This document shows, in pieces, positions 11,240 to 62,320 of a stretch of DNA of 64,000 bases. Every line of letters begins with the position of its first letter. Position 1 is the stretch's first letter. The stretch is from Neoechinorhynchus agilis (Eukaryota > Animalia > Acanthocephala): assembly GCA_051530055.1 (NCBI GenBank), contig CM121343.1:1706389-1770388 (forward strand), in the 5' to 3' direction. The notes under the pieces were generated by a model. It made no database searches and had not been told where the DNA came from. It saw nothing but the letters and a program-made list of their open reading frames with translations. The translations under genes and the position numbers were made by a program.

Positions 11240-12004
11240 TAGATACCTCGCCTCAGTAGCGCACTAGTCAACAACTGCGGTCGTAGTTTGTTCGTCGACT
11301 AAAGTTTCGCCATCGCGCTTTGCCGCCGACGTATTTTATGAGTTTGCGGTGTTCATTGTACTCGCGGCTACTTTAATTAAAGTGGACGGATGCACGGTTG
11401 AGTCGGGTTTTTTGGATGATGCCGTAAACGCCAATTTTTTCATCTTTAAACTCTCAATTCGGTACCCGTTACCGTAACGCTTCGTGATTTCATCTGTAAT
11501 TGCGTCCAAGAAATTTCTAGATCTTACCAAGGTATCAAAATGTCACTCGGAAGTTCAAAACCTTTTCTATCACACGATTATCCGTCGAGGAGACAACCAA
11601 TACCACTTGGATCTCACGCGGAATAACTCGTGAAACAAGTTTACAATAATCAAAAAAATTAAACCAATTCACCAACGTTATAACGGATTTTTTCCGTTTG
11701 AAGAGATCTAAGGTAAAATGGAAGCGATAGATTTGTTTGTATGTGTTAATAATCTGAAAAAACTTGGCATATTTGCCAACATAAAAAGTTCCACCGGAAA
11801 TTGAGGAATTCAAATCCTTCATTGGCTCGATGTAAAGACGTTATGCGTTAGATTGTTTTGGCCAATGCGAAGTGAAATTTTTTTATTAGTATTTCGTCCT
11901 CTACGGGGACTTATTTTTAACAAAAAAGATAGTATCTGTAAAACGCATAGGCTTTTTTGAAGCAGTAATAAGAGGCATATCCTTCAGAATCTCCGAGCAG
12001 AAAT

Positions 12005-12126
12005 CATTCACACCACCGCGCTGGATTACTATTGGTCGAAAGGACGGATGCAGCGTTCCCTTCCCGGTCACAGGTGCAGACTTAATGCTCCCGCCCTCGG
12101 ATCGCCAGTGATTCGTCTCAATCTTT
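12005..12126 (-). mobile_element. 3' end of a CRE-like non-LTR retrotransposon (family B), abutting the 211-bp satellite
   Basis: Reverse complement matches 47785-48305: AAGATTGAGACGAATCACTGGCGATC...GGAACGCTGCATCCGTCCTTTCGACCAATA...GCGGTGGTGTGAATG. Confidence 0.75.
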
Positions 12127-14030
12127 TAAGAATTGTTTTAGTTTTTACAAAGTGATCTGGCGACTTAAAAACTTTCAAACAATTCTGAAGAAGTGCCACG
12201 TTGAGGACGAAGTTTTAATAAAATTAATTCACTTCGCTTTGACCAAAACAATCCATGAATAACCTCTTAAAACAATTCATTGTTTTTTTTTCGGTCAAAG
12301 TGAAGAAATTTTATTAGTATTTCGTCCTCTGCGTAGAATTTAAGAATTGTTTTAGTTTTTACAAAGTGATCTGACGACTTAAAAACTTTCAAACAATTCT
12401 GAAGAAGTGCCACGTTGAGGACGAAGTTTTAATAAAATTAATTCACTTCGCCTTGACCAAAACAATCCATGAATAACCTCTTAAAAAATTCATTGTTTTT
12501 TTTGGTCAAAGTGAAGAAATTTTATTAGTATTTCGTCCTCTGCGTAGAATTTAAGAATTGTTTTAGTTTTTACAAAGTGATCTGACGACTTAAAAACTTT
12601 CAAACAATTCTGAAGAAGTGCCACGTTGAGGACGAAGTTTTAATAAAATTAATTCACTTCGCCTTGACCAAAACAATCCATGAATAACCTCTTAAAAAAT
12701 TCATTGTTTTTTTTGGTCAAAGTGAAGAAATTTTATTACTATTTCGTCCTCTGCGTAGAATTTAAGAATTGTTTTAGTTTTTACAAAGTGATCTGACGAC
12801 TTAAAAACTTTCAAACAATTCTGAAGAAGTGCCACGTTGAGGACGAAGTTTTAATAAAATTAATTCACTTCGCCTTGACCAAAACAATCCATGAATAACC
12901 TCTTAAAAAATTCATTGTTTTTTTTGGTCAAAGTGAAGAAATTTTATTACTATTTCGTCCTCTGCGTAGAATTTAAGAATTGTTTTAGTTTTTACAAAGT
13001 GATCTGACGACTTAAAAACTTTCAAACAATTCTGAAGAAGTGCCACGTTGAGGACGAAGTTTTAATAAAATTAATTCACTTCGCCTTGACCAAAACAATC
13101 CATGAATAACCTCTTAAAAAATTCATTGTTTTTTTTGGTCAAAGTGAAGAAATTTTATTACTATTTCGTCCTCTGCGTAGAATTTAAGAATTGTTTTAGT
13201 TTTTACAAAGTGATCTGGCGACTTAAAAACTTTCAAACAATTCTGAAGAAGTGCCACGTTGAGGACGAAGTTTTAATAAAATTAATTCACTTCGCCTTGA
13301 CCAAAACAATCCATGAATAACCTCTTAAAAAATTCATTGTTTTTTTGGTCAAAGTGAAGAAATTTTATTACTATTTCGTCCTCTGCGTAGAATTTAAGAA
13401 TTGTTTTAGTTTTTACAAAGTGATCTGGCGACTTAAAAACTTTCAAACAATTCTGAAGAAGTGCCACGTTGAGGACGAAGTTTTAATAAAATTAATTCAC
13501 TTCGCCTTGACCAAAACAATCCATGAATAACCTCTTAAAAAATTCATTGTTTTTTTTCGGTCAAAGTGAAGAAATTTTATTACTATTTCGTCCTCTGCGT
13601 AGAATTTAAGAATTGTTTTAGTTTTTACAAAGTGATCTGGCGACTTAAAAACTTTCAAACAATTCTGAAGAAGTGCCACGTTGAGGACGAAGTTTTAATA
13701 AAATTAATTCACTTCGCCTTGACCAAAACAATCCATGAATAACCTCTTAAAAAATTCATTGTTTTTTTGGTCAAAGTGAAGAAATTTTATTACTATTTCG
13801 TCCTCTGCGTAGAATTTAAGAATTGTTTTAGTTTTTACAAAGTGATCTGGCGACTTAAAAACTTTCAAACAATTCTGAAGAAGTGCCACGTTGAGGACGA
13901 AGTTTTAATAAAATTAATTCACTTCGCCTTGACCAAAACAATCCATGAATAACCTCTTAAAACAATTCATTGTTTTTTTTCGGTCAAAGTGAAGAAATTT
14001 TATTACTATTTCGTCCTCTGCGTAGAACTT
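12126..14030. repeat. 211-bp tandem satellite, about 9 units; each unit is an imperfect palindrome with a degenerate hammerhead motif
   Basis: CTGAAGAAGTGCC at 12185, 12399, 12610...; arms TTTTATTAGTATTTCGTCCTC / GAGGACGAAGTTTTAATAAAA and GGTCAAAGTGAA / TTCACTTCGCCTTGACC. Confidence 0.95.
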
Positions 14031-14344
14031 AATCTGAAGAAGTCATAAGTAGAGGACAATTTCATTACACAAAACCAATGTCCATTTCGAAGTAAACCAA
14101 AGATTGAAACCGAAAAGTATGTTCGGTGATGTTGATAGGCGCATTGAAACATTCGTATCGAATGTATCGTTCACCAGATCACAGTCCGCTCAACGGCGCT
14201 TTTTAACAATGTCAGATTCTCTATTTGAAATGTTATGCATAACTTAAATGGGCCCGAGGTTGGTTTTCCAAAAAAAATTAGACGTAAAATCTTTTAGTTT
14301 TGTAAAGTCATTCCTAATTCATTGCACTCTTAAAATAATGTCCA

Positions 14345-14527
14345 TTCTAGGATTAAATCGTCCCCCGGACGCTGACCGCATTTCCTCGTTGGATTGCGAG
14401 GCTTATTCTTTGGATCAGGAAAATCTTCTTGCGTCGCTCTCCTGTTTGTGCTGCAAGTCGTCGTCCGAGTTCGGCACAAAAGCTTCGTGCCGAAGATCCC
14501 AGCGCCCGTTGTGTTTCCACGCCGAAA
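14345..14527 (-). mobile_element. 3' end of a CRE-like non-LTR retrotransposon (family A), restriction-like endonuclease C-terminus
   Basis: Translates to LGSSARSFCAELGRRLAAQTGERRKKIFLIQRISLAIQRGNAVSVRGTI*, the typical CRE-clade C-terminal AIQRGNA motif; second copy at 62893-62945. Confidence 0.8.
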
Positions 14528-15460
14528 GGAAGGAAAATGTAATTTTGTTTGTAAAGTTAAACCCTAACTTTATTTAAACCTGATCACAAGGACTTAAAGA
14601 AGTTCAGCATTAAAATCTCACTATACGTAAACTTTAATCGGTGCTCAAACCTTTGTGTATTCAAAATAATTAGCGCGCAGTTTCAAAACTCGTTTTTGAA
14701 ACGACCATTGGAACTTGAAAATAACGCAATCGCTGTAATATTTGATCATGGATGACAATCAGAAGCGCTGCCCTCAAAATCCAAGCGATGAGCCTAAAAT
14801 CTATGTCACTCGATGTGGAACAAATAGCATCAGGCTTATTTATCGACACGGCAAATATCGTTATGACGGAGTTCTGGTTAACAAACTTGCGCTGGATCTA
14901 AGAGCTCATTTAACAACGAAATAATGTTAGATTTTAGAATTATAAAATATACTCTTTAAATGAAACGCGAATTTGCACTCTCGCGCAGAAAAAGTCTGTC
15001 CCAAATGCAGTATTAAAAAAGAAATGCAATTATGCAACCGGCTCATTTTGTATGCATTCGTGTTATCATGAATAACCTGGGCTAAGATTGCAATTTACTG
15101 GTTGTTTTTCTACTCAATCTAAGATCAAGGTCGCCATACCTTTCAAACGCAAAGGAAACCATAAGCCATCTTTAAAAATTAAAATCATAAATATTTGGAA
15201 TGACGAGCACCTAATCCATGCCAAGAACCGTGAAGCAAAAATTTTAGTTTTTAAAAAGCAAGAAATGCTCGCTCGTGTTAAGTGATTGATAAAAGCGATA
15301 CTCACCATAATGATTTACTATCATCTGCGCATCGGATACGTTGGTTCCTTTTGTCGAATCCGAGTAGGCGATTTGATCACCAGCTCCAGAGATACTCGTA
15401 GCATGTACACAAAGCCGCTAGCACATCGGCAAAATGATTTACACACACACTGCTTAGTCC

Positions 15461-17344: not shown

Positions 17345-19739
17345 GATCGACTGAGGTAGCAGCTTCGGCGGCGGCGGCGACGATAGGGATTATGATTGCA
17401 ATAAGCCTTGTTAAGAAGGATGATCTAAATAGAAAAAAGCATTATTGTGTGTGAAGGGGAAAACGCGTTGAGAGAGACAACAAATCAGCTCTCGGTGTGT
17501 GTTCCATGCGCCTCCGCCCCCCCCTTCCCGCTACAACATGCGGCGGCGCGTCAGGAGGATGTACAAGAGCAGCAATCGATTGCAGCGCAGCGAGAAGAGA
17601 AGATGACGAAGCGGCCGTAAAACTTGAAACCCGATGCGGCGGAGTCCTTCGCCGGCGCGCGCTTAGTCCCGAGAATTACTCACAACTCGATAGTCAAGCT
17701 GCGGTTTCCGACACACACACACGGCCGTCTATAAATATGTGATGTATACAGAACAGATCGTATAAACTTAATACACACACACACGCTTTGGTGTGATCCG
17801 GATGCCGGATACCATAGTGGTGACGAGGATCCCCGCGTAAACAACCTCGCCAATACTGAAGCATTCTTAGGTCTTCTTCACTCGTATCCGCCGGCGCCGC
17901 GCCAATAATATCAAAAATGTTGTTCGATGCGGCAGTGGGTACAACGCGCATTGTGCCACCGCCGCAACGCAGTAGTGTAGCATTAAATATATATATATAT
18001 TTATCGTGCAGATGGAACCCGGGTTTCCGCCTCATATCTCCGTGTGGATCAATTCATGTGCTTTTCACATCAGGAAATGCCGATTCATCTCGACGAATTA
18101 CTCCCCAAATCGAAGTGAGTGTTCGGTTCATTTTATCTAATTTAATTGTTGCCCGTTAGACACCACGAGTGGCGCACACAAAGATGATGGCTTTTCATTG
18201 TCCGTCGTAGACGAAATTTTACGCACATACAAGGAAATTGAAGAATCTGGTGCGCTAAGGGCACATCTTCTAATTGTCACAAAACGTTCAAATGTGTCCA
18301 TGTCATTCTCGGATCGCAAATTCTTCTCATTTCCAACACTTGCACTAATTTATCTCTCTCAGAAATGCACCATTCAACTACGAGCTCGTCTGTTCGCTTT
18401 GTTCAAAAAATGTGTAAATTACTATTTTAGCACCGTAAAATGAAACGAAGATATCATTCCTTTATTCTTGTTCCTGAAACAATAATTTCCGATTCTGCAT
18501 TCCGAATCGAGAAAGCATTTAAAAATTAATATAAGCTCTTCCATACTAAAAAAAATCGTTTTTGTAGATTTTACCTGTCAAAACTCAATATAAGTGGTCA
18601 AATTGACTGGCGATTGAAACACGATGTCCTTATCTTAATCAAAGGGAGGGTAATGACTCGTTTGATCCTCCTTTGGTTGGCTGCAAGCGACAAGGCACAG
18701 GGATTCTATGATATCTTAACCTCTAGTCCTCTTTCTCAGCAGCTGCTGTTCTGCCCCAGTAAACCTTGACAGCCGATGTCATTCCCAGTCAAAGTGTCGA
18801 AGTATTCGGCATCCAGTAAAAGGATATCTATGTTTACCAAGGAAAAAACTTAAGAGTAGATGTGTAAATTATCGACATGCATCATCGGCCCGTTCGAAAA
18901 AATGGATAATGTGTTTCCGGTATGATATTGTCAAATTTGCGCGGCTTCACCTGTTTCAAGCAGGCTCAAAGGAAAGCTGTCGCAAAAGTGAATGACTTAT
19001 TCTCATCATAGCAACATAACGACGATGTAATGGTGCAAAGTGGGGTTCAAGTGGATACTTTCAGTAGAAATTCAACATTTCCTTTGTCTTTTTAAGAGTT
19101 GCTGTGAGAGAACAATTCGGTTCTTATCAAGTTTGACCCCTTTCTCCTTTTATTTTTATCCAGAAGTCCATCCCCGGACCCTTTGTTGACAGAACCACTT
19201 TAGCCCCGCAGCCAAAGCAAACGGTAAGCAGTTTACGTGTTTTATAAATTCAGCAATCTGAGGGATGACAAAGAAAACGAGACCGAGATGGCCCAATGAG
19301 ATCCTTAAGAACTATTCCAGGCTGTGTACTTCGATAGACTTTTGAGATAGCTATTTAAAGAAATTTTGGTAGCTTTAATGATTTGATAAATTTGAACGCT
19401 CGTAAACGGTCAGTGTAAAACCGGTAGATCAAAATGTATTTTGACGTTCACACAAATGTGCAGAATTCGATATTTGCCAAGTCTTCAAAAATAAACAATG
19501 GTTTTAAGGTCCAGATATCTTTTACAGAAATAGGCAATAAAAAGAATTCTTATTCCGTATCTATGTGCGGCCTTTTTTTCACGGCTGATAATTTTCCTTG
19601 GGCACATAGCCCACCGATCTGGTTCAATAAAGCGTATAAAATCACTTAATATCCCGCTGAACCATACGGTCAGGAAAATGTCGATATGTGAGGTACCGGG
19701 GAATGTGTTTGCAATTATTGTTTAGGTTAGACTAAACAA

Positions 19740-19815
19740 ACTAAATGATGATGAACTTGACGAGGTTCGAAACGTCTTTAATAAATAATCATTTACCGGG
19801 TGTAGACCAAAACAA
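19740..19815 (+). ncRNA. Minimal hammerhead-like motif (C3 mutated), single arm of the 20487-20640 family
   Basis: ATGATGA-T-GAAC-TTGACGAG-GTTC-GAA-ACGT-C, followed by TTTAATAAA...CCGGGTGTAGACCAAAA. Confidence 0.6.
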
Positions 19816-20486
19816 TAATTCCATTCGGTTATGAGTTTGTGCATCCTTCCCGATCCTCAGATACCTTCAGAAGACGGAGCTCATCAGTGAGTTTCCTCCC
19901 TTGGTCGGTATTTCGTCCCCTTTGGCTAAAAAAGAATTCTTAGTGAATGGTGACTTATTTACTCTCCTCAAAATCAGACTTCAAGCTGTCAGTACTATCG
20001 GCTGAACAGATAAATTATATTTAAATTTTCTTCTCAGCTCCGTGTTTAAAATTAGAAAGCGTCTCCGAACCACTTCTGCATTTATAAATTGTTTCATTTA
20101 ACCAACGGCAATAAATTTGGAGCTAATTTCTTGGAACATCTTCAAAACAAAATTATAAGGCACGATAAAAATAAATATATTCGTCCTTATAAGACAAGAG
20201 GGTGAGAGCTTTTTTCTCAAATGCATCAGGATTTATCAAGGTGTGAAAATGACTTGTCGAGCAGAGCGACTTTGCTAGACCATTCTCAAGAACTAGATTA
20301 AAATGATGATAAAATCATAAAGGACCAAAATAATTTAACCCCTCTCTAAAAAAATTTCATCGAATTGATAATTTTACTTCGTTTGGTCGACTTGTTCAGT
20401 TAGCAATTCCAATTCTTCTATTGGTATTCATCCGCCATGTCCAATGAATCAATATATAATTATAATCTGTCAATATGTGAGGAGGT

Positions 20487-20640
20487 ATTGAGGTCTCGGT
20501 AAATAATATTTTATTAAAGACATTTCGAACCTCGTCGGGTTCATCGCGCCTTTTAATAATTAACAAACTGATGATGAACCCGACGAGATTCGAAACGTTT
20601 TTAATAAAAAATTATTTACCCGGTGAAGAAGACCTACACA
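20487..20640. mobile_element. Outward-facing hammerhead palindrome; right arm has an intact core
   Basis: Right arm CTGATGA(20568)-T-GAAC..ATTC-GAA-ACGT-T; left arm is its reverse complement with a damaged core. Confidence 0.75.
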
Positions 20641-21299
20641 ATAATTCCAAGTACAACCTGCCCATAAGTCAAGTTTAAAGAATTTCCAGGTTGGGTATTT
20701 TTCCTGCACACTACACGAAATTAATCGAACATTTATAATTGTGTGAATGTTGATCCATCCTTCAGTAAAAGATGCAAAACAATTTTTGCGTCGAAGTTCA
20801 TCCATTATCCAGAATAACAACCACGGTAATTTGCGCCTAACCTGATCCCTCCTTCAGCTATCAACCAAGCCCACATTAATGTGACAGGGTACAAAATGAG
20901 GCATCTTGCGAGCCAAAGAATATTAAGTACTAAAAGAGTAAAATGCGAAGATTTCACATTAATCACAAAATCACAGACAAATAAAACACTATAAAAGGCA
21001 AATCGAACATTTCAAGGAGACACAGAGTTTGAGAATTGCAGCTGTTAATTTTCCATTCTTTAACAGAAAATTCTTAATTCGAATTTTATTAGAAACTCCA
21101 CCGATTATGAATCTATGAACGGATTCTGATTGACAAATATGCCAGTGAGTTCAAAAATAGCCAAGATTTTTGTTCAAATTTACAATCCCATCCGAGCAAA
21201 ACGTATAGAACAAAAAATATGGAATATAATTGTACGTATTAGAATTTTAGCTTTAAACAATGACATTTAGATATATGCAGCCAATAAAAATTTACTGCC

Positions 21300-23725: not shown

Positions 23726-24100
23726 AAGACAGTTACCGAGAGTGATCGGTCAGTGCATTTTAGCAATATTGATTCTCTCACAGTCTTTTCATTTTATTCG
23801 GGATGGTACTCGTATGCTTCACTGGAAGTTTACCTCTCCTTCCACCGCCCGATCAACGCTAAGGACGTGTTGAAACCACCACCACGAAATCATAGGCTTT
23901 ATCAGAGCATTTCGTCGCTTTAAGTGTAAACGCGCATTCTTACCATATCCGTGAAACCAAAAAAATTGATGGACATTTATTTTGACTCCACGTTTTAGTC
24001 GTCTTTTTTAAATTTCATAAAAACTGATCCATAAATTTTTATAGCGAATTATAATAATTGATTTATTTTTCATTCAGGATCACATTCGGGTGGAAAGATA

Positions 24101-24422
24101 TTCTTGTTGAGCCGTTCAAACCACGAAAACTGTTTTGATGTTATTTAATGTTTCATGGACAAAATCCACCTCTTCAGATATCTACAAAAATTGGTTATTT
24201 TATGGGTTACCTTAGGCTCAGGAGCGCGGGTTCGTCGTACCCGTCGAATATTTCGCAAGGGGTTCGAGCGGACACTAACTCCCCGAACCACGATTACGGC
24301 AAAACCGCTCTCTTGAGCCTAAGGTAGCCAATTTTTGTAGATATCTGAAGAGGTGGATTTTGTCCATGAAATATTAAATAACATCAAAACACTTTTCGGG
24401 CTTTGAACGGCTCAACAAGAAA
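24101..24422. mobile_element. Outward-facing hammerhead palindrome with a GC-rich structured spacer
   Basis: Arms ~24101-24235 and ~24300-24422 are reverse complements; right arm CTGAAGA(24345)-G-GTGGA-TTTTG-TCCAT-GAA-ATAT-T; left arm has the same motif on the minus strand (TCTTCAG at 24171-24177). Confidence 0.8.
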
Positions 24423-24451
24423 TGATTTATTTACTTGAATTTTCCTCCGAA

Positions 24452-24500
24452 AACAATAGACTGAAGAAGGCCTACACGAAGGTCGAAAATTATTAAATCA
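24452..24500 (+). ncRNA. Minimal type I hammerhead ribozyme motif
   Basis: CTGAAGA(24461)-A-GGCC-TACACGAA-GGTC-GAA-AATT-A; palindromic AATT stem III. Confidence 0.65.
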
Positions 24501-25369
24501 ATTATTATAATACTCGCTATAAAAAAGGGTTAAAATGATGAACGAACCCATTTGGTTGCCGCCGCCGCCGTCGTCGTTTGTGCGAATAAGCACACGGTGC
24601 AAGAAGATATGGATCAGGCAAAGTTTCGTACTAAATTTGCTGTTTTGGTTCTCACTTGGTGGAGAACGTTTTATTAAAAACGTTTCGAACCTCTTCGGGT
24701 TCATTATTAGTTCGTAATTTTTCTTATGTCGATGATGATCCTGAACAAAAGTTATTATATTGATATTAAATATTTCGAGAGGAAGCCTCATGTAGAAAAG
24801 TTTTAGTTGTTTTGTGTTGTATAGCTTCATGTTTTTACTTTGGTCAGACCGTTAATGACAAATGTATATTTCGTCTGTTCACAATTCAAAATTTATCACC
24901 ACGAAGGATTTTCTCTTTATGATAAGTTATAGCGAAGGCCAAAGCAACAAATTTAATCTCGCACATATCGACAAAGTTTAATACGAAATCTAGATCGGAG
25001 ACGATCGACTTAATGCCCATATCTAAGTCGCTCTTCTGCTTTTATATTTCATTTCCAAAATATGGATTTGTTTAACAACGAAATATTAGGCAACATTTTT
25101 AAGCTCAAAATCAACGTGGTTTAACCTGCGGATTAGAGCTATACTATCCCTAAGTAAATGTGCTTCGGTTGTGGAAGGAATTACTTTAGGACTTTATTAA
25201 ATTTAAATATCATCTTCAGACGTAAGCCCCTGGGATTTTTTGATTAAAAGAAACTATTCTTGAATTGAAATCTACTAACCACTCGTCGTTGGTCGGAATA
25301 CGTGAATGAACGAACAAAAATACAGACAAAAACTATATTTTGACTAAGTTGTAAAGAAGTTGTTCATTT

Positions 25370-25553
25370 ATGTGTTCTTTGGTGATTAGAAGAATAAATA
25401 TTGATTTATTATTCTACATATTTCGTCCGTCTCGTCGGATTTCTTGTAAGTTTTCTACTAATTAAGCTAACTTATAAGAAATCCGACGAGACGGACGAAA
25501 TATTGAAAACAATAAATCAATATATATTCTTCTCATCGCTAAAGAACACATAT
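25370..25553. mobile_element. Outward-facing palindrome with degenerate hammerhead motifs
   Basis: Arms TATGTGTTCTTT...TTTCGTCCGTCTCGTCGGATTTCTT and AAGAAATCCGACGAGACGGACGAAATATT...AAAGAACACATA; cores mutated. Confidence 0.75.
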
Positions 25554-25711
25554 CTTGACTAGGATAGCAATAAGCTTTATTATCTTGTGAAATAATACTT
25601 GATTTTCGAGCCGCATGATTAAGTGTAATTTTTGAAAATGGATACTTAAAACGGTCTGTTGTAATGACAAAGAAAATCATACAAAGAAGATCTTCCGGGA
25701 TGGTGGTTAAA

Positions 25712-25805
25712 AATTCATTGACTGATGAGGGGGAGTTTCCTCTTTCAAAAAATTTCATAATAATAAAGGAATCTTTAACCGGGGGATTATGTACTCCACC
25801 ATTCA
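25712..25805 (+). mobile_element. Single pLTR-like arm with a hammerhead motif (G12 mutated), same family as 32161-32357
   Basis: CTGATGA(25722)-GGGGGAG-TTTC-CTCTTTC-AAA..., then CCGGGGGATTATGTACTCCACC. Confidence 0.6.
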
Positions 25806-26144
25806 AGATAAGGAAAATCTTGATTTACGAGCTTTCCCGTCTTACAGCTTAAGCTCAGGAATCTACAATGGCTCGCGGAGATGTGAAGTGTGTGTTAAAG
25901 CAGCGACATCGAAGCAGAAAGTTCGTCGTGAGATCATGTCTATAAAATTAGAGATTATTAGGTAAGATTGAATTATTCTTGTTTGTTTATGGCGGAAAAT
26001 TGGAGAAGGTTTTTTAGAAAACTTTACAAAAAGCGCAAGATTGTGGCTCTGAAATATTGGATTTAATAAAATCCTTGAATTTTCCGCCATAAAAAAACAT
26101 TATCAGATATTCCATCCAATTGTTCCTTCGAGTGGATGTGTATT

Positions 26145-26327
26145 CTCAATGGCGAATTGTTACACACTCGAGTTTTATTATTGAAATCTTCATTGCGACT
26201 TTTCAAGGCCTCAGCCTCCACACATTTAAAACTTCCAAGCAATGCTTGAGAAGGAGGCTGAGGCCTTGAAAATTCGCAATGAAGATTTCAATAATAAAGC
26301 TCGAGTATGCAACAATTCGTCATTGAA
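26145..26327. mobile_element. Outward-facing palindrome; right arm carries a hammerhead with a U3-A8 variant core
   Basis: TGC-TTGAGAA(26246)-G-GAGGC-TGAG-GCCTT-GAA-AATT-C-GCA; related copy at 49990-50145. Confidence 0.72.
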
Positions 26328-26441
26328 AATTATCAGATATCTCCGTAGAAATTAAGATCGACTCAAACGAATGGATAAAAACTAGACAACTGTTAAAATC
26401 ACCCGACCGTTTAAATTGAATTTTAGAGACAAACGTGCGTT

Positions 26442-27559: not shown

Positions 27560-27700
27560 GAACAATTCATTGTTTTAGTCAAAGCGAAGTGAAGTTAATT
27601 TTTGTTAATATTTCGTCCTCTATTTTGGATTTTTATAAGTCGAGTGTATTAATTTGTAGAGGAAGAAATATTAACAAAAATTTAAGATCAAAATAATCTA
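27560..27700. mobile_element. Degenerate outward-facing pair of the family that forms the 211-bp satellite
   Basis: TTGTTAATATTTCGTCCTC ... GAGGAAGAAATATTAACAA; left arm resembles the satellite arm and 11855-11915. Confidence 0.6.
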
Positions 27701-29571: not shown

Positions 29572-30316
29572 TTGCGGTCGGCCTGCAAACGTACTACTTA
29601 CTCCTGCTTAGGTGAAAAGGTATGACAGATCTACACAAATGCTCGGTCTTACGTACTCGAGTTTCTCTTTGATCGTCATATAAGGATCTCCCGTTTACCC
29701 TCCTCCCTCTCGAAATCTTTCACATTTGTTCAAGAAGACTGGAACAATTTGTTAAGTGCATTAATATCTTGATTTAATTGTGAACGTGATATCTTCACCA
29801 ATTCTTTGATAAATTGAAATTTGCGTTTTTTATTGCATTTGTCTTTTTCGAAATGCAAGGTTCCTCGGTTGGCACTGTTCCGGCCAATTTCCACATTCGA
29901 CCTAAGTCGACTCGCTTAGATTTATAGAGGCTAAGGGTGCTAAGTAAATATGAGTATATAATGACTCAGAAATGCGTGAAAAGACAAGCTAGTATTTAAG
30001 AAAATCCTCTTGCCAAAGTATAGACAACGCCCTTGTTAGTTTTTGTAATGGCAATTAGTATATTTTTCTGGTTCATCGAATTTCCTCCGAATAGTGCACA
30101 TCCTCGAAGAATCCATTGTTCTAATACACTAGAATCCTTTTTATCCGAAGTAATTAAGATCGGATACCATTCAGATAACTGAAAACGGGGGAAGTGGTTA
30201 AAAATCACAGTTGATAAAACTTACAAGCAATACATTGAAGAAGACCGAAAATTATCAAATAAATCAATTTTTATAATTCGCTATAAAAAGTTAGTTTTTA
30301 AAAAGCAAAATTTGGG

Positions 30317-30461: not shown

Positions 30462-30471
30462 ATTTTATTAG

Positions 30472-33684
<3,213 letters not shown>

Positions 33685-35130: not shown

Positions 35131-35739
35131 TTCGAACTCTTTTTGTTCATTCATATCGCCATTTCAATGCGGTTCATTAAGGCCAGAAGACCAAAACAAC
35201 AATAAGTTCACGGAATCAAACCTTCATCAAAACTATTTTTCCTTATATTTTCTTGTGCATAATTTCCAAACGAGGGGTGTATATTTTTTCTCAGACCGAT
35301 TTTCGATTATAGTGAAATTATGGTATTTCTGTCGAGTTGGCATTAGGGCGAAGAACTCGGATGAAGCTTCTCGGCACGGTTGGAAGTTAAAGTTCCGGAT
35401 CTTGTAATCATTTCACAATACGCGTACAAGTCTTAAAAGAGGTGTTAGTAATTCCATTTGTGGTCACACGATGCCCTTCAATGCTTTTATCGCCATTTCA
35501 GCGATATTTATGCAAATAAAAATACGTGTCCTCTACAAGTGAAACTCTCTAGGACGAAACTCCTTAAGTTTCATTTCTCGGTGTTCGCGCTTACGTCAAA
35601 ACTATTAAGCGTCCGGACGTCACCTGGAATCAGAAGAATCGTAGTACCAAGAGTCCACCAGCAAGACCTACATAGTGGCCTTTGCAATCGAAGGATTTCC
35701 TGATAACTGCGGCGATGGAAAATCCTTCGGGTTAATCAA

Positions 35740-37345: not shown

Positions 37346-37355
37346 CTGATTAACC

Positions 37356-41745: not shown

Positions 41746-41807
41746 AGCTTTAGTGACCAGTTTAGTAATGGAAGTCGCGATTAAATTAACTCCTTGTGTT
41801 GTTTCAG

Positions 41808-49449: not shown

Positions 49450-49989
49450 TGCAGTAGATCAAAAAAGTGGAAGATTAGTGATGGAGCCGCCGGGGTGATC
49501 ACCTTAGCAAAAAAACAGAGGTGAATACGAGGCGCCGGAGGGTATTGATTCGCTCAATGAACGCGAGTCTTCTCGTGTGCGAGCGAACGAGCGCGTGTGC
49601 GTTAGAGCTCACGCACACTAAACGACGACGACGACGACGACGCTTCTCGAAACGGCCATGTCAATTGCTGTGACGATGGCGAAAAAGGAACGGTATAAAT
49701 TTATACCTCAACACTTTGGATGCGTTCTCATAGATTCTCACCGCCGTGGGTGACGTAATCATTGAACGATCAAAGTGACGCTTGGATCTCAACGTCCGCC
49801 TAACATAGGAGGCGATTGAACAGAAATCGAATAACGCGCCCAATTATTCGCACTTCTCTATTGAATTTTTATCCCTTCTATCAGAAAGCGCCGTCGGTTT
49901 AGATCCGTCGGACTAATCGCTATCGAGATGGCGATTTGTGTACAAACAATTCACAATGCTCAAACTTAACAAAATCGTTTCGTTCTATC

Positions 49990-50145
49990 CAATTGCTCCT
50001 TCGAGTACTCGAGCTTTATTATTGAACTGTTCATTGCGAATTTTCAAGGCCTCCTTCTCAAGCATTGCTTGGAAGTTTTTAAATATGCGAACTCGCATTC
50101 GCAAGATTGATTTCAATAAAACTCGAGTGTGTAACAATTCGCCAT
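49990..50145. mobile_element. Second copy of the 26145-26327 palindrome family; minus-strand arm keeps the U3-A8 core
   Basis: Minus strand TGC-TTGAGAA-GGAGGCCTT-GAA-AATT-C-GCA; shared CTCGAG...AACAATTCG termini. Confidence 0.7.
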
Positions 50146-50249
50146 TGGGAAAATCTTTTCGCTTTAAAAGCAACCGAACAGACACAATGTTTACTTTATT
50201 TTGCCACCATCTCGTCAGAGATTCAAAAATTTATTAATTTATTTCTCCA

Positions 50250-51580: not shown

Positions 51581-52023
51581 CGATCCTAAGCAGAAGGGCA
51601 TGGTCGTCGTACGAAGTCGAAACCGATGGAAAACCTATTCGAAGACGGAAACCGGATTGGAACCAGGCAATAATGCGAAGGTAACCGCTGATACCGATAC
51701 GGGCGAACACCCGGACGTACTAGCCATCACCATACCACGACGAGGCTCAAGGGAACGGAGACCCCACAACAGTACCATTTTGGAAAGGATAAGATGTCAT
51801 GTGAGCCTGCAAACGATCGATGCGCGATTATCACACCCACGCAATCAATCAATGCGCAACGTTGTGGATGTGGGGGGCGGGGTTGAGCGTGGACCAGAAA
51901 ACGCTTGGCGATTTTTAAGCACAGATACACTCATATCAATATATTGTCCTATTTCCAATCGATCAGTTAATTAAATCATAGAGAATTGTCATCGGGGTGA
52001 ATTTTATTCGGGTTTGGCGATAC

Positions 52024-52236
52024 TTTTCCCCCGGATTGTTGTTGGTGTTGATCATTTATTTTAAAATATTTCGTAAGCTTTTTGCTTACCTCTTCAGTTA
52101 TATTGCTTGTAAGTTTCAAATGTATGAGTTGGTGTCACATTTGAAACTTACAAGCAATATAACTGAAGAGGTAAGCAAAAAGCTTATGAAATATTTTAAA
52201 ACAAATGATCAACACCAACTACAATCCGGGGGAAAA
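52024..52236. mobile_element. Near-perfect outward-facing hammerhead palindrome with intact motifs on both strands
   Basis: 100-bp arms (52024-52123, 52137-52236) with 3 mismatches and a 13-nt spacer; TAA-CTGAAGA-G-GTAAGC-AAAAA-GCTTA(C/T)-GAA-ATAT-T-TTA on each strand. Confidence 0.88.
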
Positions 52237-52519
52237 ACATTGCCAAATACGAAGTTAATTAAATGTAACAAGAAATGTATTCTTGTGTGATGAAACATCG
52301 GCATGTGCCAATTTTCGAAAACACTTCAATCGAAAATTTGTTATTCTTTTTAAAAGCTTTTTTGGAAGTCAACTCAAAAGTTATTTTTCATAATTAAGTA
52401 CTCAAGAAAAACTGTTTGATATGCACTTATAATTTGTAAGGAAATCGATGGCAAATTTTGAATCCTCGAGTTTTCGTTCAAAGTGAGCAGGGGAAATGGT
52501 TGTTTCCCTTCACCCAAGG

Positions 52520-54050: not shown

Positions 54051-54099
54051 GGAAAAGCGACCGTTTCCATATAAATAATTGGTGTCTTCGGAGGAAAAT

Positions 54100-54205
54100 A
54101 TACTTTCTTTTGGTAGTTTTGCCACCTCGGATTTAAATTCACTAATTTATTTCCCCGATATTACAGGCCGAATAATTCCGACATTTTTCCAAGATCATCT
54201 AAAAT
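54100..54205 (-). mobile_element. Single arm of the 62105-62320 palindrome family
   Basis: TTTCTTTTGGTAGTTTTGCCACCTCGGATTTAAATTCACTAATTTATTTCCCCGATATT matches the reverse complement of ~62270-62335. Confidence 0.8.
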
Positions 54206-54459
54206 ATGTTAAAGTATTAAATCCTTTCAGATGATCGCCAATAAACCAATGAATTTAAATCGCTGTGGGGATAACTACCAAAAGAAAATGAATAATTGGA
54301 TTACGCTCAAAAGTATATGAAAGAATCGTATACCTCAATTGATCATGAACCGATGAAGAAAATCTTAATAGGTCAAAAGGCTTTATTTTTTATATGACGG
54401 GGTTTGTGTGTGATCGGTGTAGATTTATAAGGTTCCATGGTTATTTTTTTGTAGATTCG

Positions 54460-56739: not shown

Positions 56740-56811
56740 TAAATACATTCGCCTTCGATTTTATTTTCAATACGTCTAAATGGAATTTTTGAGTTTATTT
56801 TAGATAACAAA

Positions 56812-59411
56812 ATGAAGTATATAGTCGTTTGTGGAGCTGTAATCAGCGGATTGGGGAAAGGTGTCATCATTTCAAGCATTGGGTTAATATTGAAATCTTA
56901 CGGTTACCGAATAACCGCAATCAAAATTGATCCCTATATTAATATAGACGCTGGTACATTTTCGCCATACGAACACGGTGAGGTGTTTGTGCTCAATGAT
57001 GGTTCAGAAGTCGACCTTGACCTCGGCAATTATGAACGATTTCTCGATTTGGAACTAAGTTCAATCAATAACATAACTACTGGTAAAATATACAAAAACG
57101 TAATCGAACGTGAACGCAAAGGTGATTATCTTGGGAAGACCGTACAAGTGATTCCTCATATTACTGATGCAATTCAGAGTTGGATTGCACATGCGAGTGA
57201 AATTCCGTGTGATGAATCAGGCGACATTATGCCCGACATTTGCCTAATTGAGTTAGGTGGCACCACTGGCGATATAGAGAGTATGCCATTCATCGAAGCC
57301 TTGCGCCAGTATCAAGGAAGAGTGGGTAGATGCAATTTCTGTATTATAATGGTCAGTCTATTGCCTTACTTAAAGACAACCGGTGAGGCAAAGACAAAAC
57401 CTACTCAAGAAGCTATAAGGATTATTCGGGGCCTTGGCTTAGCTCCAGATATTATAATCGCCCGTTGTGAGGTCGGAATTAGTCGGGATATTAATCAAAA
57501 AATTTCCATGTTCTGCGACGTACCCCTCGATTGCGTTGTTTGCGTGCCTGATCAAAAGAATATTTTTCAAGTACCACTGCTTCTCGAAGAAAATTTCAAG
57601 ATTTCATCGAAAATATTGAAAAGGCTTCATATGCCTGTTCAAGCCAACATCAAAAATGGTCCACAAAGCTTTGAAAAGTGGCATGAATTGGTCAGACGAA
57701 CTGAAGGGATCGAAAACATGAAAAGCGTAACAATAGGACTGGTTGGTAAATACACCGAATTTCGAGATGCCTACACAAGTGTCATCAAAGCTTTAGAACA
57801 TGCATCTATCCTGTGTTCACGGAAATTAATCTCGAGGTTCCCTGACACAATTTTATTGAGGGAGACCCACACTTTGATTTATTGTATTTTGACATTGAAG
57901 GATTTCAGAGTTCTTGGCGATTAAGCACAATTGTGTTTTCTCTGATAAAGGTCCCAATACATTTCTAAAACTTTTGTTTTCTGTAATTGAAGAACGATTC
58001 AGTGAATAACGATATCTATTTATATTTTGTATATTTTTGGTGAAAATACTCCCGGTAATAGCATATTTGATTTATTTGAGATATTTCGAAGGAGGTGACC
58101 TCGCCTCGTCAGTCATCTAAAAATATGTTTTTCATATTCAGGTTTTAAGGGGATCGCCAAACCTGAGGTTCGGGGACAATTATCCGTTCTGGCCCCTGTG
58201 CTTTTCACCAAAATTATACTTTGACTAGCCCAAAAGATTTTCTATCGATGATTTATATTTTGCTTTCCCAACGAATTGAATATCTTACACAATCGCAAGT
58301 TTGCCACTTGAAATAACTGTTTAAATCATTGCCTTTTTTCGGAAATCATCATTTTACATATACAAAACAATGCTCACATACGCATCAAAAGGCTTAAGTC
58401 GTAGGAGACCCTCATATCGTTCATTCCACCCTACGAATAATAGAAAATCCACCTGAATTACACACTTTTATATGAACTGATGTAAAGGGGTTTTCAATAT
58501 CAGTTTCTTGATGCAGGTTCTGAGTTAGCCACCTCGAAATCACGGGTCTTATGAGCTGCCAAATGCAGCAACTAACGTGAAATCGGATGTTGATGTAGGC
58601 AGGTTTTGGAGGCGGCGTGAATCGTCGTTGCATGTAGGATTCCTGACCTTTTCGCTTTCAAAGGGTGTCTTGAATCTCAGGAACAGACTTGATAATGATC
58701 AAATCTACGGAACTTGAAGAATCGAATTGTGGTAACGCTTGGAAAATGTTGCAATCATGTGACGGAATAATAGTTCCCGGCGGTTTTGGATCGCGCGGGA
58801 TAGAAGGAAAGATTCTTGCCATTGAGCACGCCAGATTGAAAAAAGTCCCATTCTTAGGAATATGTCTTGGATTCCAATGTGCTGTTATAGAGTACTGTAG
58901 AAATGTTTTAAATATGAAATCAGCTAATACCACGGAAATCGATCCTAATTGTGGCGATCCAGTAATCATTGAGATGCCCGAACATAATCCGGAGGTGAAG
59001 GGAGCGACTATGCGTTTGGGACGTAAGACCTCACAATTTATAGTTGCAGATTCAATCAGTCAGAATCTGTACATGAAATCACATTTTCTCGTAGAAGGAA
59101 AGTACATTGAAGAAAGACACCGCCACCGATATGAGGTGAATCCAGAGTATATTGAACGTATTCACGACGCCGGAATGAAATTTGTAGCTGCTAGTTTAGA
59201 CAAAAAACGAATGGAAATTCTTGAGCTAGAGAAACACCGGCATCCTTATTTCATAGCGACACAGTTCCATCCGGAATATTTGAGCAGACCAATTAAGCCT
59301 TCTCCACTATACGCCGGTTTTATTGCCCATTCAACACAAATGTCAACTAAGAAACTTCATTTCAACTACTCTGACATTAACTTACATAATAACTTGGAAA
59401 GTTTATCTTGA
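56812..59411 (+). CDS. CTPS1: CTP synthase, interrupted once (~57829-58685)
   Basis: MKYIVVCGAVISGLGKG, KIDPYINIDAGTFSPYEHGEVFVLNDGSEVDLDLGNYERF, GLVGKYT, VPGGFGSRGIEGKI, LGICLGFQ, ERHRHRYEVNP, TQFHPEY. Confidence 0.95.
58030..58140 (-). mobile_element. Solo terminal repeat of the 35740-37345 Penelope family with a hammerhead motif, in the CTPS interruption
   Basis: Minus strand TGA-CTGACGA-G-GCGAGG-TCA-CCTCCTTC-GAA-ATAT-C-TCA, then CAAATATGCTATTACCGGGAGTATTTTCACCAAAA, identical to the tail of 37241-37345. Confidence 0.85.
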
Positions 59412-59749
59412 CCGCAGCTCAGATATGAATTGGTAAATAAATCGTCAATTTCTATTAGTTTTGACCGCTATGATCGACGACGATATTTCTTCGTACAGCG
59501 ATGGTAATCAAAGATTAATAAAGATAAGTTTAAAACGATCAGTTTATACCAATTTCTCTTTACCTCACTTCTTTAAATCTGTTAAAAAAGAAAATATATT
59601 TTTTGCAAATTTGTTCTGGTTCCTCTTCTTTCTTCATTAATAGAACGTGTTATTATTATAACCAATTGCGCCGAGTTTAAAGCTAATTTTTTAATAGTTT
59701 GGGACTCACCAATGGTAGCGAGAATTCATAACTCTTTAATTTCAGATTC

Positions 59750-60270: not shown

Positions 60271-61004
60271 CAATTGGGCGTCTATACGATTTAGCCAGGG
60301 AGAACTAATGCTTATTGACCAGATTTAGTTTTTCCTCGCGAAGGCTCTTTTTTAAAAGAGAAACGCCTAAGTCATTCACATATTTTTTTATTCGTAGTTT
60401 TAGCATATTCGAGTTTTGTTGCAAAACCCAAAACTCTAATTCATGCAAAAGCTTTTTTGTTCATCCCCCGCACCCCCGGGCACGTATTGTTTTATTATTT
60501 AAAAACATTTTTAAATTTACGATGCTCTCGACACACTGGAAGCACTATAGAATGTCTTTAGTAATACTTTTTGAATCAATGTTTTGTCGATAAAATTTCT
60601 AGGAGTCATAAAATTAGAGTTACCCAGAAAACACGAAAATGTCCGTCATTTGACGTCTCAAAATAGTCAAACTGTAAACTGTTGGAGAGGGAAAAGATTA
60701 TTCAAGGTAGCGAGAGTTATAAAGGCGTTGAAAGTCTATTCCTTAATATACCTTCAATCCCCTCAAAATCGTAACTTTTGCCTCCCTTAACTTGCATCGG
60801 ATGCATGCAAAGTGCTTTCGAGATGTTGCTTAAGTTTAAATTTTAACGGCAGTGTGAGAACCTGAGTTAATTCTCAAAAGACGTCAAATTGCCACCAGGA
60901 GAGATGAGGGCATTAGAATGCGAAGCAAGCAAGTTTGTCCTTTTATCCAGCTAAGACTCACACACTTTCTCCTCAACTAAGGACGACCCTTTAATTATTT
61001 CCAA

Positions 61005-61865
61005 TCAATTATGCTGGATGCGTAATCTGCCATGATCAAATGCCTGCACGAATTTCGCGGCTTGGATCCAGCCTGCATATTCTCCCCAAATCTTCCTATA
61101 ATGCGCAGAGATAATATCGTAGCTCTTGTTCGTTAAACTCCTAGGAACTTTCAACGACTTGAAAGTATCTTCTGCATACTTGCGCATGTGAGTGTCGATG
61201 GGTACAACGTGCCACTTCCTCATGCTCATCAGGAGAATGCAATCAGCTACCTATGTGATTTTTAGAGGGTATTCTTAAGCGATTCGACTAACTTTAAGCC
61301 CGACTCCAGGAATTTTCAGCAGTTGTCGTCGTGCATCCTCATGATTCATTTCACTAACTTCCTCCAGGAATTTTCTATCAGGCGGACACTGCTTATTGAG
61401 ACACCAATCACGTAGTGTCCGTTTTTCTACCGCCTCGGTTGTATATATAGCGAGCAGCGTTGTTAATAAGTTTAGCTCTGTAGCCAAACGAGTGCTTTTT
61501 TAATCCAGGGATTACATCAGGCCGGGATAATCTCTCTAGAGAGAAATGTATCATCGGCTAAGAATTGAAAACTAACCGATTTCTGGGAAATTGTGCAACT
61601 TAAAGGACTGTAAATCTCCTGGAAAAGTAATACAGCCATCTCCGTACTCGGAGCATAAAGTGTTTACCATTCGTCGAATACGTTTCGCGTTGTTGTTAGC
61701 AGAACAAATAAAAGTGAAAACGCATTCAACTGGGTCCGTGGACAATACCCGTACTCCATACTGGACGCATTTCTCACAATCGACGGAAACATCAAGACTA
61801 AGATAGTGGCACAGATTATTTTCGCACGATTTAGCTTCAAGTGACTTAATTAATAGCTTGTTCAT
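61005..61865 (-). CDS. OGG1: 8-oxoguanine DNA glycosylase; introns 61536-61576 (41 nt) and 61251-61292 (42 nt)
   Basis: DPVECVFTFICSANNNAKRI, FPEI|ERL...FGYRAKLI, HhH-GPD motif LKIPGVGLK|VADCILLMSMRKWHVVPIDTH, GEYAGWIQA. Confidence 0.92.
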
Positions 61866-62104
61866 TGTATTTAATTTGATAGAAGTTCCAAAAAGAAACA
61901 CTGATAATCTCATCGACCTTTTACAAGTTTAAAACCATTGGAGCAGCAATAAAACCGTACTCAGAAAATCATAAGTATTTTTCTTATCGTTCTTTTTGAT
62001 AATCAAGACCGCAAATGTCTGTTGTATTTACGTTTTACAGTAACGATAGGTGCCGGACGCATGCTTGAGAAAAGTTTAATGCTAGCGATTGTTGTCCGAA
62101 ATAA

Positions 62105-62320
62105 ACCACCACCTCGGATTTGAATTCACTGATTTATTGCCGATATTTCACGTCGGATAATTCTGACATTTTCCTAAGATCTGTCATTGTTAAAGTGTTA
62201 AATTCGCACTTGAGCGTCTCACTTTTAAAAATGACAAACCTTGGAAAAATGTCGGAATTATCAGACGTGAAATATCGGGGAAATAAATTAGTGAATTTAA
62301 ATCCGGGGTGGCAAAACTAC
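62105..62320. mobile_element. Outward-facing palindrome with a degenerate hammerhead-like motif
   Basis: CCTCGGATTTGAATTCACTGATTTATT..GATATTTCACGTC / GACGTGAAATATC..AATAAATTAGTGAATTTAAATCCGGGG; right arm TTGGAAA-A-ATGTC..GACGT-GAA-ATAT-C. Confidence 0.75.

What the first reader, a model, noticed from the sequence alone, without database searches (positions are those of the whole stretch)
11855..62320. A class of outward-facing hammerhead palindromes: Penelope termini joined head-to-head with no coding body
About ten inverted-repeat elements from several sequence families occur in 64 kb: 20487, 24101, 25370, 26145, 27560, 32161, 49990, 52024, 62105 and the units of the 211-bp satellite. Seen: each arm contains CTGANGA (or a decayed form), an extra nucleotide, a short stem II, GAA and a 4-nt palindrome (ATAT, ACGT, AATT) plus H. 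Polarity never varies: the left arm reads on minus, the right arm on plus. The decayed Penelope at 35740-37345 has the same geometry with RT-EN in the middle. Established: PLE termini carry minimal type I hammerheads with palindromic stem III that cleave as dimers, and PLE insertions often have an inverted 5' terminal repeat. Inference: these are not MITEs but PLE integration products reduced to two 3' ends, e.g. priming by PLE RT on both sides of a break, and may be a mobile non-autonomous class. I do not recall such terminus-only palindromes being described as a dominant repeat class, but cannot search.
Basis: partly seen in the sequence, partly recalled or inferred. Interest (0 to 1): 0.85.

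Follow-up and report, generated by a model that had tools for sequence, protein, structure and literature searches.

The report
Head-to-head Penelope tail scars with hammerheads
The inverted repeats are real and are best read as the usual insertion scars of Penelope-like retrotransposons, two shortened 3' ends joined head to head and each carrying the known "minimal" hammerhead ribozyme, so this is a common local form of a known architecture and not a new kind of element.

Summary
Observation largely confirmed. All ten named places and the 211-bp satellite are inverted repeats. A strict minimal-hammerhead descriptor gives 7 hits against 0.64 expected. A covariance model adds solo copies of the same families.

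The catalytic core is intact in only seven of eleven families: A, B, C, D, E, F and the satellite. Polarity holds: 11 of 11 independent junctions have their 3' ends outward.

- The element at 35730-37355 is a broken Penelope-like element (PLE) on the minus strand, with a short inverted tail upstream.
- The two arms have unequal inner ends.
- Some arms carry a one-sided 30-39-nt 3' extension, the published PLE "tail".
- Solo tails of the same families occur, and there are no transposon-type end duplications.

The literature already describes inverted 5'-truncated PLE copies, paired minimal hammerheads on opposite strands, and a PLE protein that extends both DNA strands in vitro.

Modestly new: head-to-head forms outnumber solo tails here (about 11 to 6), one family (J) was copied as a whole palindrome, and one family seeded a satellite.

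Earlier notes of this scan reported the same thing on other DNA of this genome (s1-037921, s1-038089).

The parts
35730..37355 (-). Family B: broken, 5'-truncated EN+ Penelope-like element. ORF pieces lie on the minus strand (RT-like 37231-36547, GIY-YIG EN 36341-35985). Its own 3' UTR with a decayed hammerhead is at about 35800-35842, and its 3' end is at 35730.
   Evidence: ORFs. The EN piece finds homologues at E=1.9e-16, and long homologues carry RVT_1 plus a C-terminal GIY-YIG. Atlas look-alikes of both pieces are HTH_animal/RVT_1/GIY-YIG clusters. Arm alignment.
37242..37355 (+). Short inverted 3' tail of family B joined to the 5' side of the PLE. It carries an intact minimal hammerhead at 37263-37293.
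   Evidence: 47.2 bits; 35730-35842 vs 37355-37242, 76%.
58028..58189 (-). Solo 5'-truncated tail of family B with hammerhead (58063-58112).
   Evidence: 89% to 37242-37345. No inverted partner upstream.
20481..20649 (.). Family A head-to-head pair. The right arm (+) has an intact CUGAUGA at 20568. The left arm (-) is cut inside the core.
19739..19823 (+). Solo tail of family A.
24641..24750 (-). Family A tail (24641-24715, minus) with a roughly 20-nt inverted stub upstream. The family H tail (24752-24795, minus) abuts it.
24101..24421 (.). Family E head-to-head pair with intact hammerheads on both arms (24147-24177 minus, 24345-24375 plus) and a 117-nt non-palindromic centre.
24032..24525 (.). 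Family D outer pair enclosing E: a D tail remnant on minus at 24032-24068, and a D hammerhead plus tail on plus at 24461-24525.
   Evidence: A DNA-run contig joins 24056 to 24451, skipping 394 nt.
30215..30293 (+). Solo tail of family D with an internal deletion in stem II.
25369..25552 (.). Family G head-to-head pair. Stem II, GAA and AUAU are kept, and the same dead core is present in both arms.
25707..25806 (+). Solo tail of family C. CUGAUGA is intact; GAA has changed to CAA.
32146..32367 (.). Family C head-to-head pair with decayed cores. The right arm is 68% identical to the PLE 3' UTR at 35718-35825.
26112..26330 (.). Family J head-to-head pair. The left arm is cut in stem II, and the 33-nt 'spacer' is the 5' extension of the right arm. 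A 30-nt 3' extension is present on the left arm only.
49985..50154 (.). Second copy of the J palindrome in the opposite orientation. It has the same junction and the same arm-specific variants, and it has deletions.
27561..27690 (.). Family K solitary head-to-head pair. Its junction differs from that of the satellite.
12125..14040 (.). 211-bp satellite, 9 units at 99% identity. Each unit is one K-family pair of arms plus about 20 nt. The plus arm has CUGAAGA..GAA-GUUU.
11835..11915 (-). Solo K-family tail just left of the satellite.
52000..52260 (.). Family F head-to-head pair. The arms are 124 nt and 91% complementary, with intact hammerheads at 52065-52097 (minus) and 52163-52195 (plus).
   Evidence: As RNA it folds into a hairpin of -172.6 kcal/mol.
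54078..54297 (.). Family I pair with a long minus arm and a short plus arm that starts after the ribozyme.
62109..62355 (.). Family I pair. The right arm runs 39 nt further 3' than the left arm (a one-sided 'tail').

Best explanation
The palindromes are insertion products of Penelope-like retrotransposons (PLEs). The PLE enzyme cuts both strands of the target and primes reverse transcription from each. Two cDNA copies of the element's 3' region are therefore laid down in opposite orientation and meet head to head. Both copies are usually heavily 5'-truncated, so what remains is two short 3' tails with their 3' ends outward.

Each tail keeps the minimal hammerhead that sits about 20-100 nt from the PLE 3' end. 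After the hammerhead come an AAUAAA hexamer and often a CCGGG box.

Shown here: the geometry, the homology to a PLE tail, the unequal truncations, the one-sided tail extension and the solo copies. Inferred: that two independent priming events, and not one snap-back, made each pair. Also inferred: that the ribozymes are passengers, because families with dead cores are as abundant as the others. Once formed, a pair can be copied again as a unit (family J) or amplified into a satellite (family K).
For: 1. The element at 35730-37355 is a PLE. Its GIY-YIG piece has homologues at E=1.9e-16, and long homologues carry RVT_1 plus a C-terminal GIY-YIG. It has a 1.5-kb arm on minus and a 114-nt inverted tail on plus, 76% alike.
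2. The family C arm is 68% identical over 115 nt to that PLE's 3' UTR.
3. Six solo tails of families A, B, C, D, H and K have no inverted partner.
4. The arms share their outer ends but differ at their inner ends. The A left arm is cut in the core, the J left arm in stem II, and the I54104 right arm starts after the ribozyme.
5. Different copies of families A, I and K have different junctions.
6. I62105 (39 nt) and J26145 (30 nt) carry a one-sided 3' extension. This matches the optional 30-40-bp PLE tail of PMC8557442 and PMC11167929.
7. No TIRs or TSDs are present.
8. 11 of 11 junctions face outward.
9. [quoted passage not shown]
10. A purified PLE protein cleaves and extends both strands in vitro (PMC11167929).
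11. Summed DNA-run contig depth is about 100-1500 times the flanking unique depth at A, E, G and J.
Against: - Only one family (B) is tied to a coding PLE in this window. Parents for A, D-K were not found because the rest of the genome could not be searched.
- The RT pieces have no significant sequence-search hit: Pfam finds none, and BLASTP to homologues is not significant.
- Most pairs are nearly symmetric, with 13-45-nt spacers. A snap-back or a palindromic master would also give that.
- J shares one junction at two loci, so not every pair formed in place.
- Helix I is hardly present, and no cleavage evidence could be obtained because only contigs were available.
Confidence: 0.75

Rival explanations
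1. The twin-tail palindromes are themselves a non-autonomous mobile class. A read-through transcript of either strand ends in a PLE-type 3' tail and is re-inserted as a unit by PLE reverse transcriptase. This overlaps with the main explanation and differs only in how most copies arose.
For: J26145 and J49990 share the same asymmetric junction and arm-specific variants without flank homology. In both, the long 3' extension is on one arm only, and on the opposite arm type in the two loci. That fits transcription from either strand with internal RT initiation. Depth at J is about 1500 times unique depth.
Against: Families A, I and K have different junctions in different copies. Solo tails are common. 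A transcript across a pair folds into a near-perfect hairpin (-172.6 kcal/mol), which is a poor RT template. The evidence rests on only two J loci. The depth figure cannot separate solo arms from palindromes.
Confidence: 0.3
2. Each pair arises from one priming event followed by snap-back. The cDNA folds back at the RNA 5' end and copies itself, giving a mirror image.
For: Most pairs are nearly symmetric with short spacers of 13-45 nt. The outward polarity is also predicted by this model.
Against: A mirror copy should have identical outer ends. Yet I62105 and J26145 have a 30-39-nt extension on one arm only. The PLE has arms of 1.5 kb and 0.11 kb. I54104 has arms of about 170 and 58 nt.
Confidence: 0.1
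3. They are retrozyme-type elements: rod-shaped circular RNAs with hammerheads whose DNA copies look like inverted repeats, the 211-bp satellite being the tandem form.
For: The satellite has nine head-to-tail 211-bp units, each with one hammerhead-like motif. Animal retrozymes are PLE derivatives (bioRxiv 10.64898/2026.07.22.740005).
Against: The satellite motif has G at 15.1 and a non-palindromic helix III. The dispersed pairs are single units and not tandem. The arms are 83-94% complementary and carry the motif on both strands, unlike retrozyme monomers. The 99% unit identity fits recent DNA-level amplification.
Confidence: 0.07
4. They are MITEs or foldback DNA transposons, or ordinary hairpins, in which hammerhead-like strings occur by chance.
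For: They are short, AT-rich, non-coding inverted repeats. Rfam sees only miRNA-like hairpins. One palindrome (27780-27890) has no ribozyme motif.
Against: The motif is about 11-fold over chance, and more than 100-fold with a palindromic helix III. Stem II covaries. There are no TSDs or TIRs. Solo arms occur, and there is homology to a PLE 3' UTR.
Confidence: 0.03

Closest known systems
Complex tandem/inverted insertions of EN+ Penelope-like elements (Evgen'ev & Arkhipova 2005; Craig et al. 2021, PMC8557442)
   Same: High 5' truncation, an inverted 5'-truncated copy adjoining the 5' end, a hammerhead near the 3' end, an optional 30-40-bp tail at one end, and no regular TSD.
   Different: In most cases here both copies are cut down to 50-180 nt, so no coding body or pLTR remains. 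Such pairs outnumber solo tails in this window (about 11 to 6).
PLE minimal hammerheads, including 'dual min-HHRs ~100-700 bp apart on opposite strands' in Schistosoma mansoni (Cervera & de la Pena 2014, PMC4209133)
   Same: [quoted passage not shown]
   Different: Helix I here is only 1-3 A-U pairs. Several families carry family-wide dead cores. That paper did not analyse the paired form.
Both-strand cleavage and extension, with internal RT initiation, by the Anolis PLE protein PAc (PMC11167929)
   Same: It gives a mechanism for two opposed cDNA copies at one break and for the two alternative 3' ends 30-40 nt apart. Hammerhead cleavage is not needed for insertion in that system.
   Different: It is an in vitro result in a vertebrate element. 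No head-to-head product was reported in the passages read.
Animal non-LTR retrozymes (Cervera & de la Pena 2020; bioRxiv 10.64898/2026.07.22.740005)
   Same: Short non-coding hammerhead repeats derived from PLE terminal regions; tandem arrays such as the 211-bp satellite.
   Different: Retrozymes are head-to-tail units with one polarity. The elements here are head-to-head, and the satellite's ribozyme looks inactive.
L1 twin-priming inversions (Ostertag & Kazazian 2001; recalled from memory, not checked here)
   Same: Two priming events at one target give an inverted 5' segment.
   Different: In L1 the second primer anneals inside the same RNA, so the inverted part is internal sequence. Here both arms are 3' ends.

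Membership tests
PLE minimal type I hammerhead (Cervera & de la Pena 2014) | Conserved core CUGANGA ... GAA | tested here: met
   Intact in families A, B, C (solo copy), D, E, F and the K satellite. Lost family-wide in G, I, J and H.
PLE minimal type I hammerhead (Cervera & de la Pena 2014) | [quoted passage not shown] | tested here: met
   All 8 aligned motifs have the extra nucleotide and G10.1. 5 of 6 pairs show changes on both sides, and 87.5% of cells are paired against 33-40% when slid. Partly circular, because of the descriptor-based choice of sequences.
PLE minimal type I hammerhead (Cervera & de la Pena 2014) | Very short helix III with a palindromic sequence, allowing dimers | tested here: met
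   AUAU, ACGU or AAUU after GAA in 5 of 7 strict hits, against 0.04 expected. The satellite has GUUU.
PLE minimal type I hammerhead (Cervera & de la Pena 2014) | Helix I of about 4-5 bp | tested here: inconclusive
   Only 1-3 A-U pairs next to the core. Duplex energy is no better than mismatched controls. A 2-bp helix I is reported for D. virilis PLEs (PMC4209133).
PLE minimal type I hammerhead (Cervera & de la Pena 2014) | Self-cleavage, as dimers | not testable with these tools
   Only assembled contigs of RNA runs were available, with no read ends (table 6 empty).
Rfam hammerhead families | Match to a curated hammerhead covariance model | tested here: not met
   No hammerhead hit at gathering score or at E<=10. 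This is expected for motifs without a closed helix III.
EN+ Penelope-like element insertion | [quoted passage not shown] | tested here: met
   Met only for family B (35985-37231, minus, broken). EN. The RT is supported only by Atlas look-alikes.
EN+ Penelope-like element insertion | 5' truncation with a common 3' end; an inverted 5'-truncated copy at the 5' side | tested here: met
EN+ Penelope-like element insertion | [quoted passage not shown] | tested here: met
   I62105 right arm +39 nt; J26145 left arm +30 nt; J49990 on the other arm type.
EN+ Penelope-like element insertion | Partial tandem forming pseudo-LTRs | tested here: inconclusive
   No pLTR-ORF-pLTR unit is present in the window. 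The E and D hammerhead units follow each other on one arm (24345 and 24461), which may be nesting instead.
Animal non-LTR retrozyme | Head-to-tail tandem units of about 170-400 bp, each with an active type I hammerhead, giving circular RNA | tested here: not met
   The tandem form applies only to the 211-bp array. Its motif has G at 15.1 and a non-palindromic helix III. Circular RNA is not testable here.
MITE / foldback DNA transposon | Conserved terminal inverted repeats flanked by a fixed-length target duplication | tested here: not met
   No TSD at any of 11 elements. The outer ends differ by optional extensions, and solo arms exist.

The most novel reading that the evidence does not exclude
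Twin-tail palindromes are a self-sustaining non-autonomous PLE derivative. Either strand yields an RNA that ends in a valid PLE 3' tail, so a pair can be re-mobilised from both directions. Family J, with about a thousand-fold depth, would be an example. Their perfect hairpin transcripts could also feed small-RNA silencing of the parent PLEs.
Probability: 0.2. Interest if true: 0.55.

Novelty: new member of a known kind. Interest (0 to 1): 0.3.

Why it matters
It shows, in a syndermatan genome, what the both-strand priming seen in vitro for a PLE enzyme leaves behind when both copies are severely truncated. The result is short hairpin-forming repeats that annotation pipelines would call MITEs, miRNA-like hairpins or unknown repeats. 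Recognising them as PLE scars improves repeat annotation. It gives natural data on PLE start sites (long and short tails) and on truncation. It also shows that hammerhead activity is not needed for spread. It does not reveal a new mechanism.

Tried and rejected
- Rfam at gathering score and at E<=10 found no hammerhead, only sub-threshold miRNA-hairpin matches that reflect the hairpin shape.
- Pfam on the PLE ORF pieces gave only a weak GIY-YIG hit (E=0.049) and nothing for the RT pieces. BLASTP of the RT pieces against long homologues was not significant.
- The helix I test was no better than controls.
- The TSD search found none.
- RNA runs were available only as contigs, so cleavage-site ends could not be seen. 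The opposite-strand 'joints' at J are mapping ambiguities of a palindrome and were not used.
- Mirror-image variants at 26186/26286 were rejected as evidence, because one contig maps to both arms.
- A literature search for 'Penelope + head-to-head + hammerhead' returned nothing. The 2026 retrozyme preprint does not mention inverted forms.
- The organism name (Neoechinorhynchus agilis) comes from earlier scan notes and was not verified here.

Full report

- 20498-20620
- 24101-24421
- 25369-25552
- 26142-26330
- 27561-27690
- 32146-32367
- 52000-52260
- 62109-62311
- an unlisted relative of 62105 at 54078-54297
- 49985-50154, a damaged second copy of the 26145 element

The 211-bp satellite (12125-14040, 9 units, 99% identical) is built of two opposed arms per unit. 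One palindrome, 27780-27890, has no ribozyme-like motif.

Rfam finds no hammerhead at gathering score or at E<=10. It sees only sub-threshold miRNA-like hairpins.

Five of them have a palindromic 4-mer, against 0.04 expected. All seven have the extra nucleotide.

I aligned eight motifs from six families. The alignment shows invariant C3, U4, G5, A6, G8, A9, G10.1 and GAA. The stem II is kept by compensatory changes: 87.5% of cells are paired against 33-40% when the partner is slid. The caveat is that six of the eight were selected by a stem-requiring descriptor.

A covariance model built from this alignment was run unfiltered over the window. It recovers the partner arms and also solo copies at 19745(+), 24710(-), 58112(-), 25722(+), 30235(+), 24795(-) and 11871(-).

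**2. What is overstated**

The core is intact only in:
- both arms of E (24101) and F (52024)
- the right arm of A (20568)
- the short arm of the Penelope element (37263)
- D (24461)
- a solo copy of C (25722, where GAA is lost)
- the plus arm of the satellite, whose helix III is GUUU with G at 15.1

Families G, I and J have the same dead core in all copies, so they inserted with a dead ribozyme.

The left arms of A20487 and J26145 are not decayed. They are truncated inside the ribozyme.

The homologous remnant (UUGAGAA) lies upstream, next to a block (AAACTTMCAAGCAAT) that J shares with families D and F.

Helix I is only 1-3 A-U pairs and no better than mismatched controls.

**3. The Penelope element**

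ORF pieces on the minus strand between 37231 and 35985 include a GIY-YIG piece. Its homologues reach E=1.9e-16 in the 1.84-billion-protein library. Long homologues carry RVT_1 followed by a C-terminal GIY-YIG (P0028, P0094).

Pfam itself gives only E=0.049 for GIY-YIG and nothing for the RT pieces. Atlas look-alikes of both pieces are animal HTH_animal/RVT_1/GIY-YIG clusters (leads only).

The element is broken into at least five frames and lacks the N-terminal part. Its own 3' UTR runs leftwards to 35730 and holds a decayed copy of the hammerhead. At its 5' side sits a 114-nt inverted copy of the same tail (37242-37355, plus strand) with an intact hammerhead. The two are 76% alike and both end in ..GATTAACC.

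**4. Evidence that the short pairs are the same thing**

a) The family C arm (32265-32379) is 68% identical to the PLE 3' UTR (35718-35825). B also has a solo tail at 58028-58189, 89% identical to the short arm.

b) Six solo tails of families A, B, C, D, H and K have no inverted partner within 250 nt. Single 5'-truncated tails and head-to-head pairs are therefore alternative outcomes for one family.

c) Outer (3') ends are shared while inner (5') ends vary:
- The A left arm stops in the core, while the right arm continues at least 22 nt further.
- The J left arm stops in stem II, while the right arm continues 33 nt.
- I54104 has arms of about 170 nt and about 58 nt.
- The PLE has arms of 1.5 kb and 0.11 kb.

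d) Copies of A, I and K have different junctions, so pairs formed repeatedly.

e) I62105's right arm runs 39 nt past the point where its left arm ends. J26145's left arm runs 30 nt past its right arm. [quoted passage not shown] It corresponds to two alternative internal RT start sites (PMC11167929).

f) No element has a target-site duplication or conserved terminal inverted repeats.

g) All 11 independent junctions have their 3' ends outward (P=5e-4 if random).

**5. Tail anatomy**

Across families that are otherwise hardly alignable, the ribozyme is followed by an AAUAAA hexamer within 3-25 nt. This holds in 9 of 11 families. The background is 3% per 30 nt, or 8.7% in AT-rich windows.

In A, B, C, F and I a CCGGG-like box follows about 30-40 nt further on, and the 3' end lies 20-100 nt after the cleavage site. 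I did not find this described in the papers I read. Its function is untested.

**6. Mechanism**

Craig et al. 2021 state that PLE insertions are highly 5'-truncated. [quoted passage not shown] Cervera & de la Pena 2014 list the same ribozyme traits and mention dual min-HHRs about 100-700 bp apart on opposite strands in Schistosoma. The 2024 study of the Anolis element shows that the protein cleaves and extends both strands, and that hammerhead cleavage is not needed for insertion in vitro.

The simplest reading is two target-primed reverse transcriptions at one break, both aborted early and joined head to head.

A single snap-back event predicts the same polarity but identical outer ends. The one-sided extensions and the very unequal arms of B and I54104 argue against it.

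A transcript across a pair folds into a near-perfect hairpin (F: -172.6 kcal/mol, z=-28). The ribozyme there cannot compete, and it has no second sense copy with which to form a dimer. I therefore regard the ribozymes in the pairs as passengers.

**7. Is any of it mobile as a unit?**

J26145 and J49990 lie 24 kb apart in opposite orientation. They share the same asymmetric junction. They also share variants that distinguish the long arm from the short arm, and there is no flank homology. This palindrome was therefore copied as a whole at least once.

In each locus the 30-nt extension sits on one arm only, and on different arm types in the two loci. That would fit re-insertion from transcripts of either strand with internal RT initiation. 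This is inference from two loci.

The K family shows another fate. A pair plus about 20 nt became a 211-bp satellite. At 99% unit identity this was probably DNA-level amplification, because its ribozyme looks inactive.

The E pair lies inside a D pair. One DNA-run contig joins 24056 to 24451, skipping 394 nt, which suggests D pairs without E exist elsewhere.

**8. Abundance and expression**

In the DNA run, summed contig depth is about 77-90 over unique sequence. At the elements it is about 31,755 at A, 10,000-15,000 at E, 10,607 at G and 57,000-129,000 at J. The tool warns that this is not a copy number, but it shows that the families are highly repeated.

RNA-run contigs cover the elements at modest depth. 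No read ends were available, so cleavage could not be examined.

**9. Verdict**

The architecture and its likely mechanism are already in the literature, and earlier notes of this scan reached the same reading on other pieces of this genome (s1-037921, s1-037920, s1-038089).

What is modestly new:
- the predominance of terminus-only pairs over solo tails in this window (about 11 to 6)
- unit-level copying of one family
- a palindrome-derived satellite
- the conserved AAUAAA/CCGGG tail anatomy

The organism name in those earlier notes (Neoechinorhynchus agilis) was not verified here.

Noticed in passing
window: tails after 20599, 37293, 32303, 30254, 52195, 25504, 62276, 26275, 12430 and others: An AAUAAA hexamer lies 3-25 nt after the hammerhead cleavage site in 9 of 11 tail families. 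A CCGGG-like box often follows about 30-40 nt further on. The hexamer may be a poly(A) signal and the box an RT start or recognition element.
   Followed up: partly
window 3512-5034 and 52520-54050: A 1.5-kb inverted duplicate (95% identical) includes the 114-bp satellite, about 48 kb apart, at the two sides of the window.
   Followed up: no
window 35690-35729 and 37356-41744: The Penelope element sits at the edge of, or inside, the 83-bp satellite. Its left flank is a degenerate satellite unit, and the array starts at the base after its right end.
   Followed up: partly
window 27780-27890 and 25980-26099: Two further inverted repeats have no hammerhead motif. The first begins with AAAATAAAC on each arm and may be a tail-only pair cut after the ribozyme.
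   Followed up: no
window 24203-24320: The 117-nt centre of the E pair holds another ..C-GAA-AUAU-U string on the minus strand, preceded by a G/C-rich stem but without a CUGANGA box. It may be a remnant of a third element.
   Followed up: no
window 44863-47586 (-) and 15461-17344 (-): Long ORFs of 907 and 627 aa have no Pfam family at E<=0.01. Neighbouring ORFs match CPEB (9899-11239), Rad21/Rec8 (42142-43425), EF-G-like (55056-55877) and CTP synthase (56812-57924).
   Followed up: no
window 52000-52260: As RNA, the F pair is a 124-bp near-perfect hairpin (-172.6 kcal/mol). Such transcripts would be double-stranded RNA and could feed small-RNA pathways.
   Followed up: no
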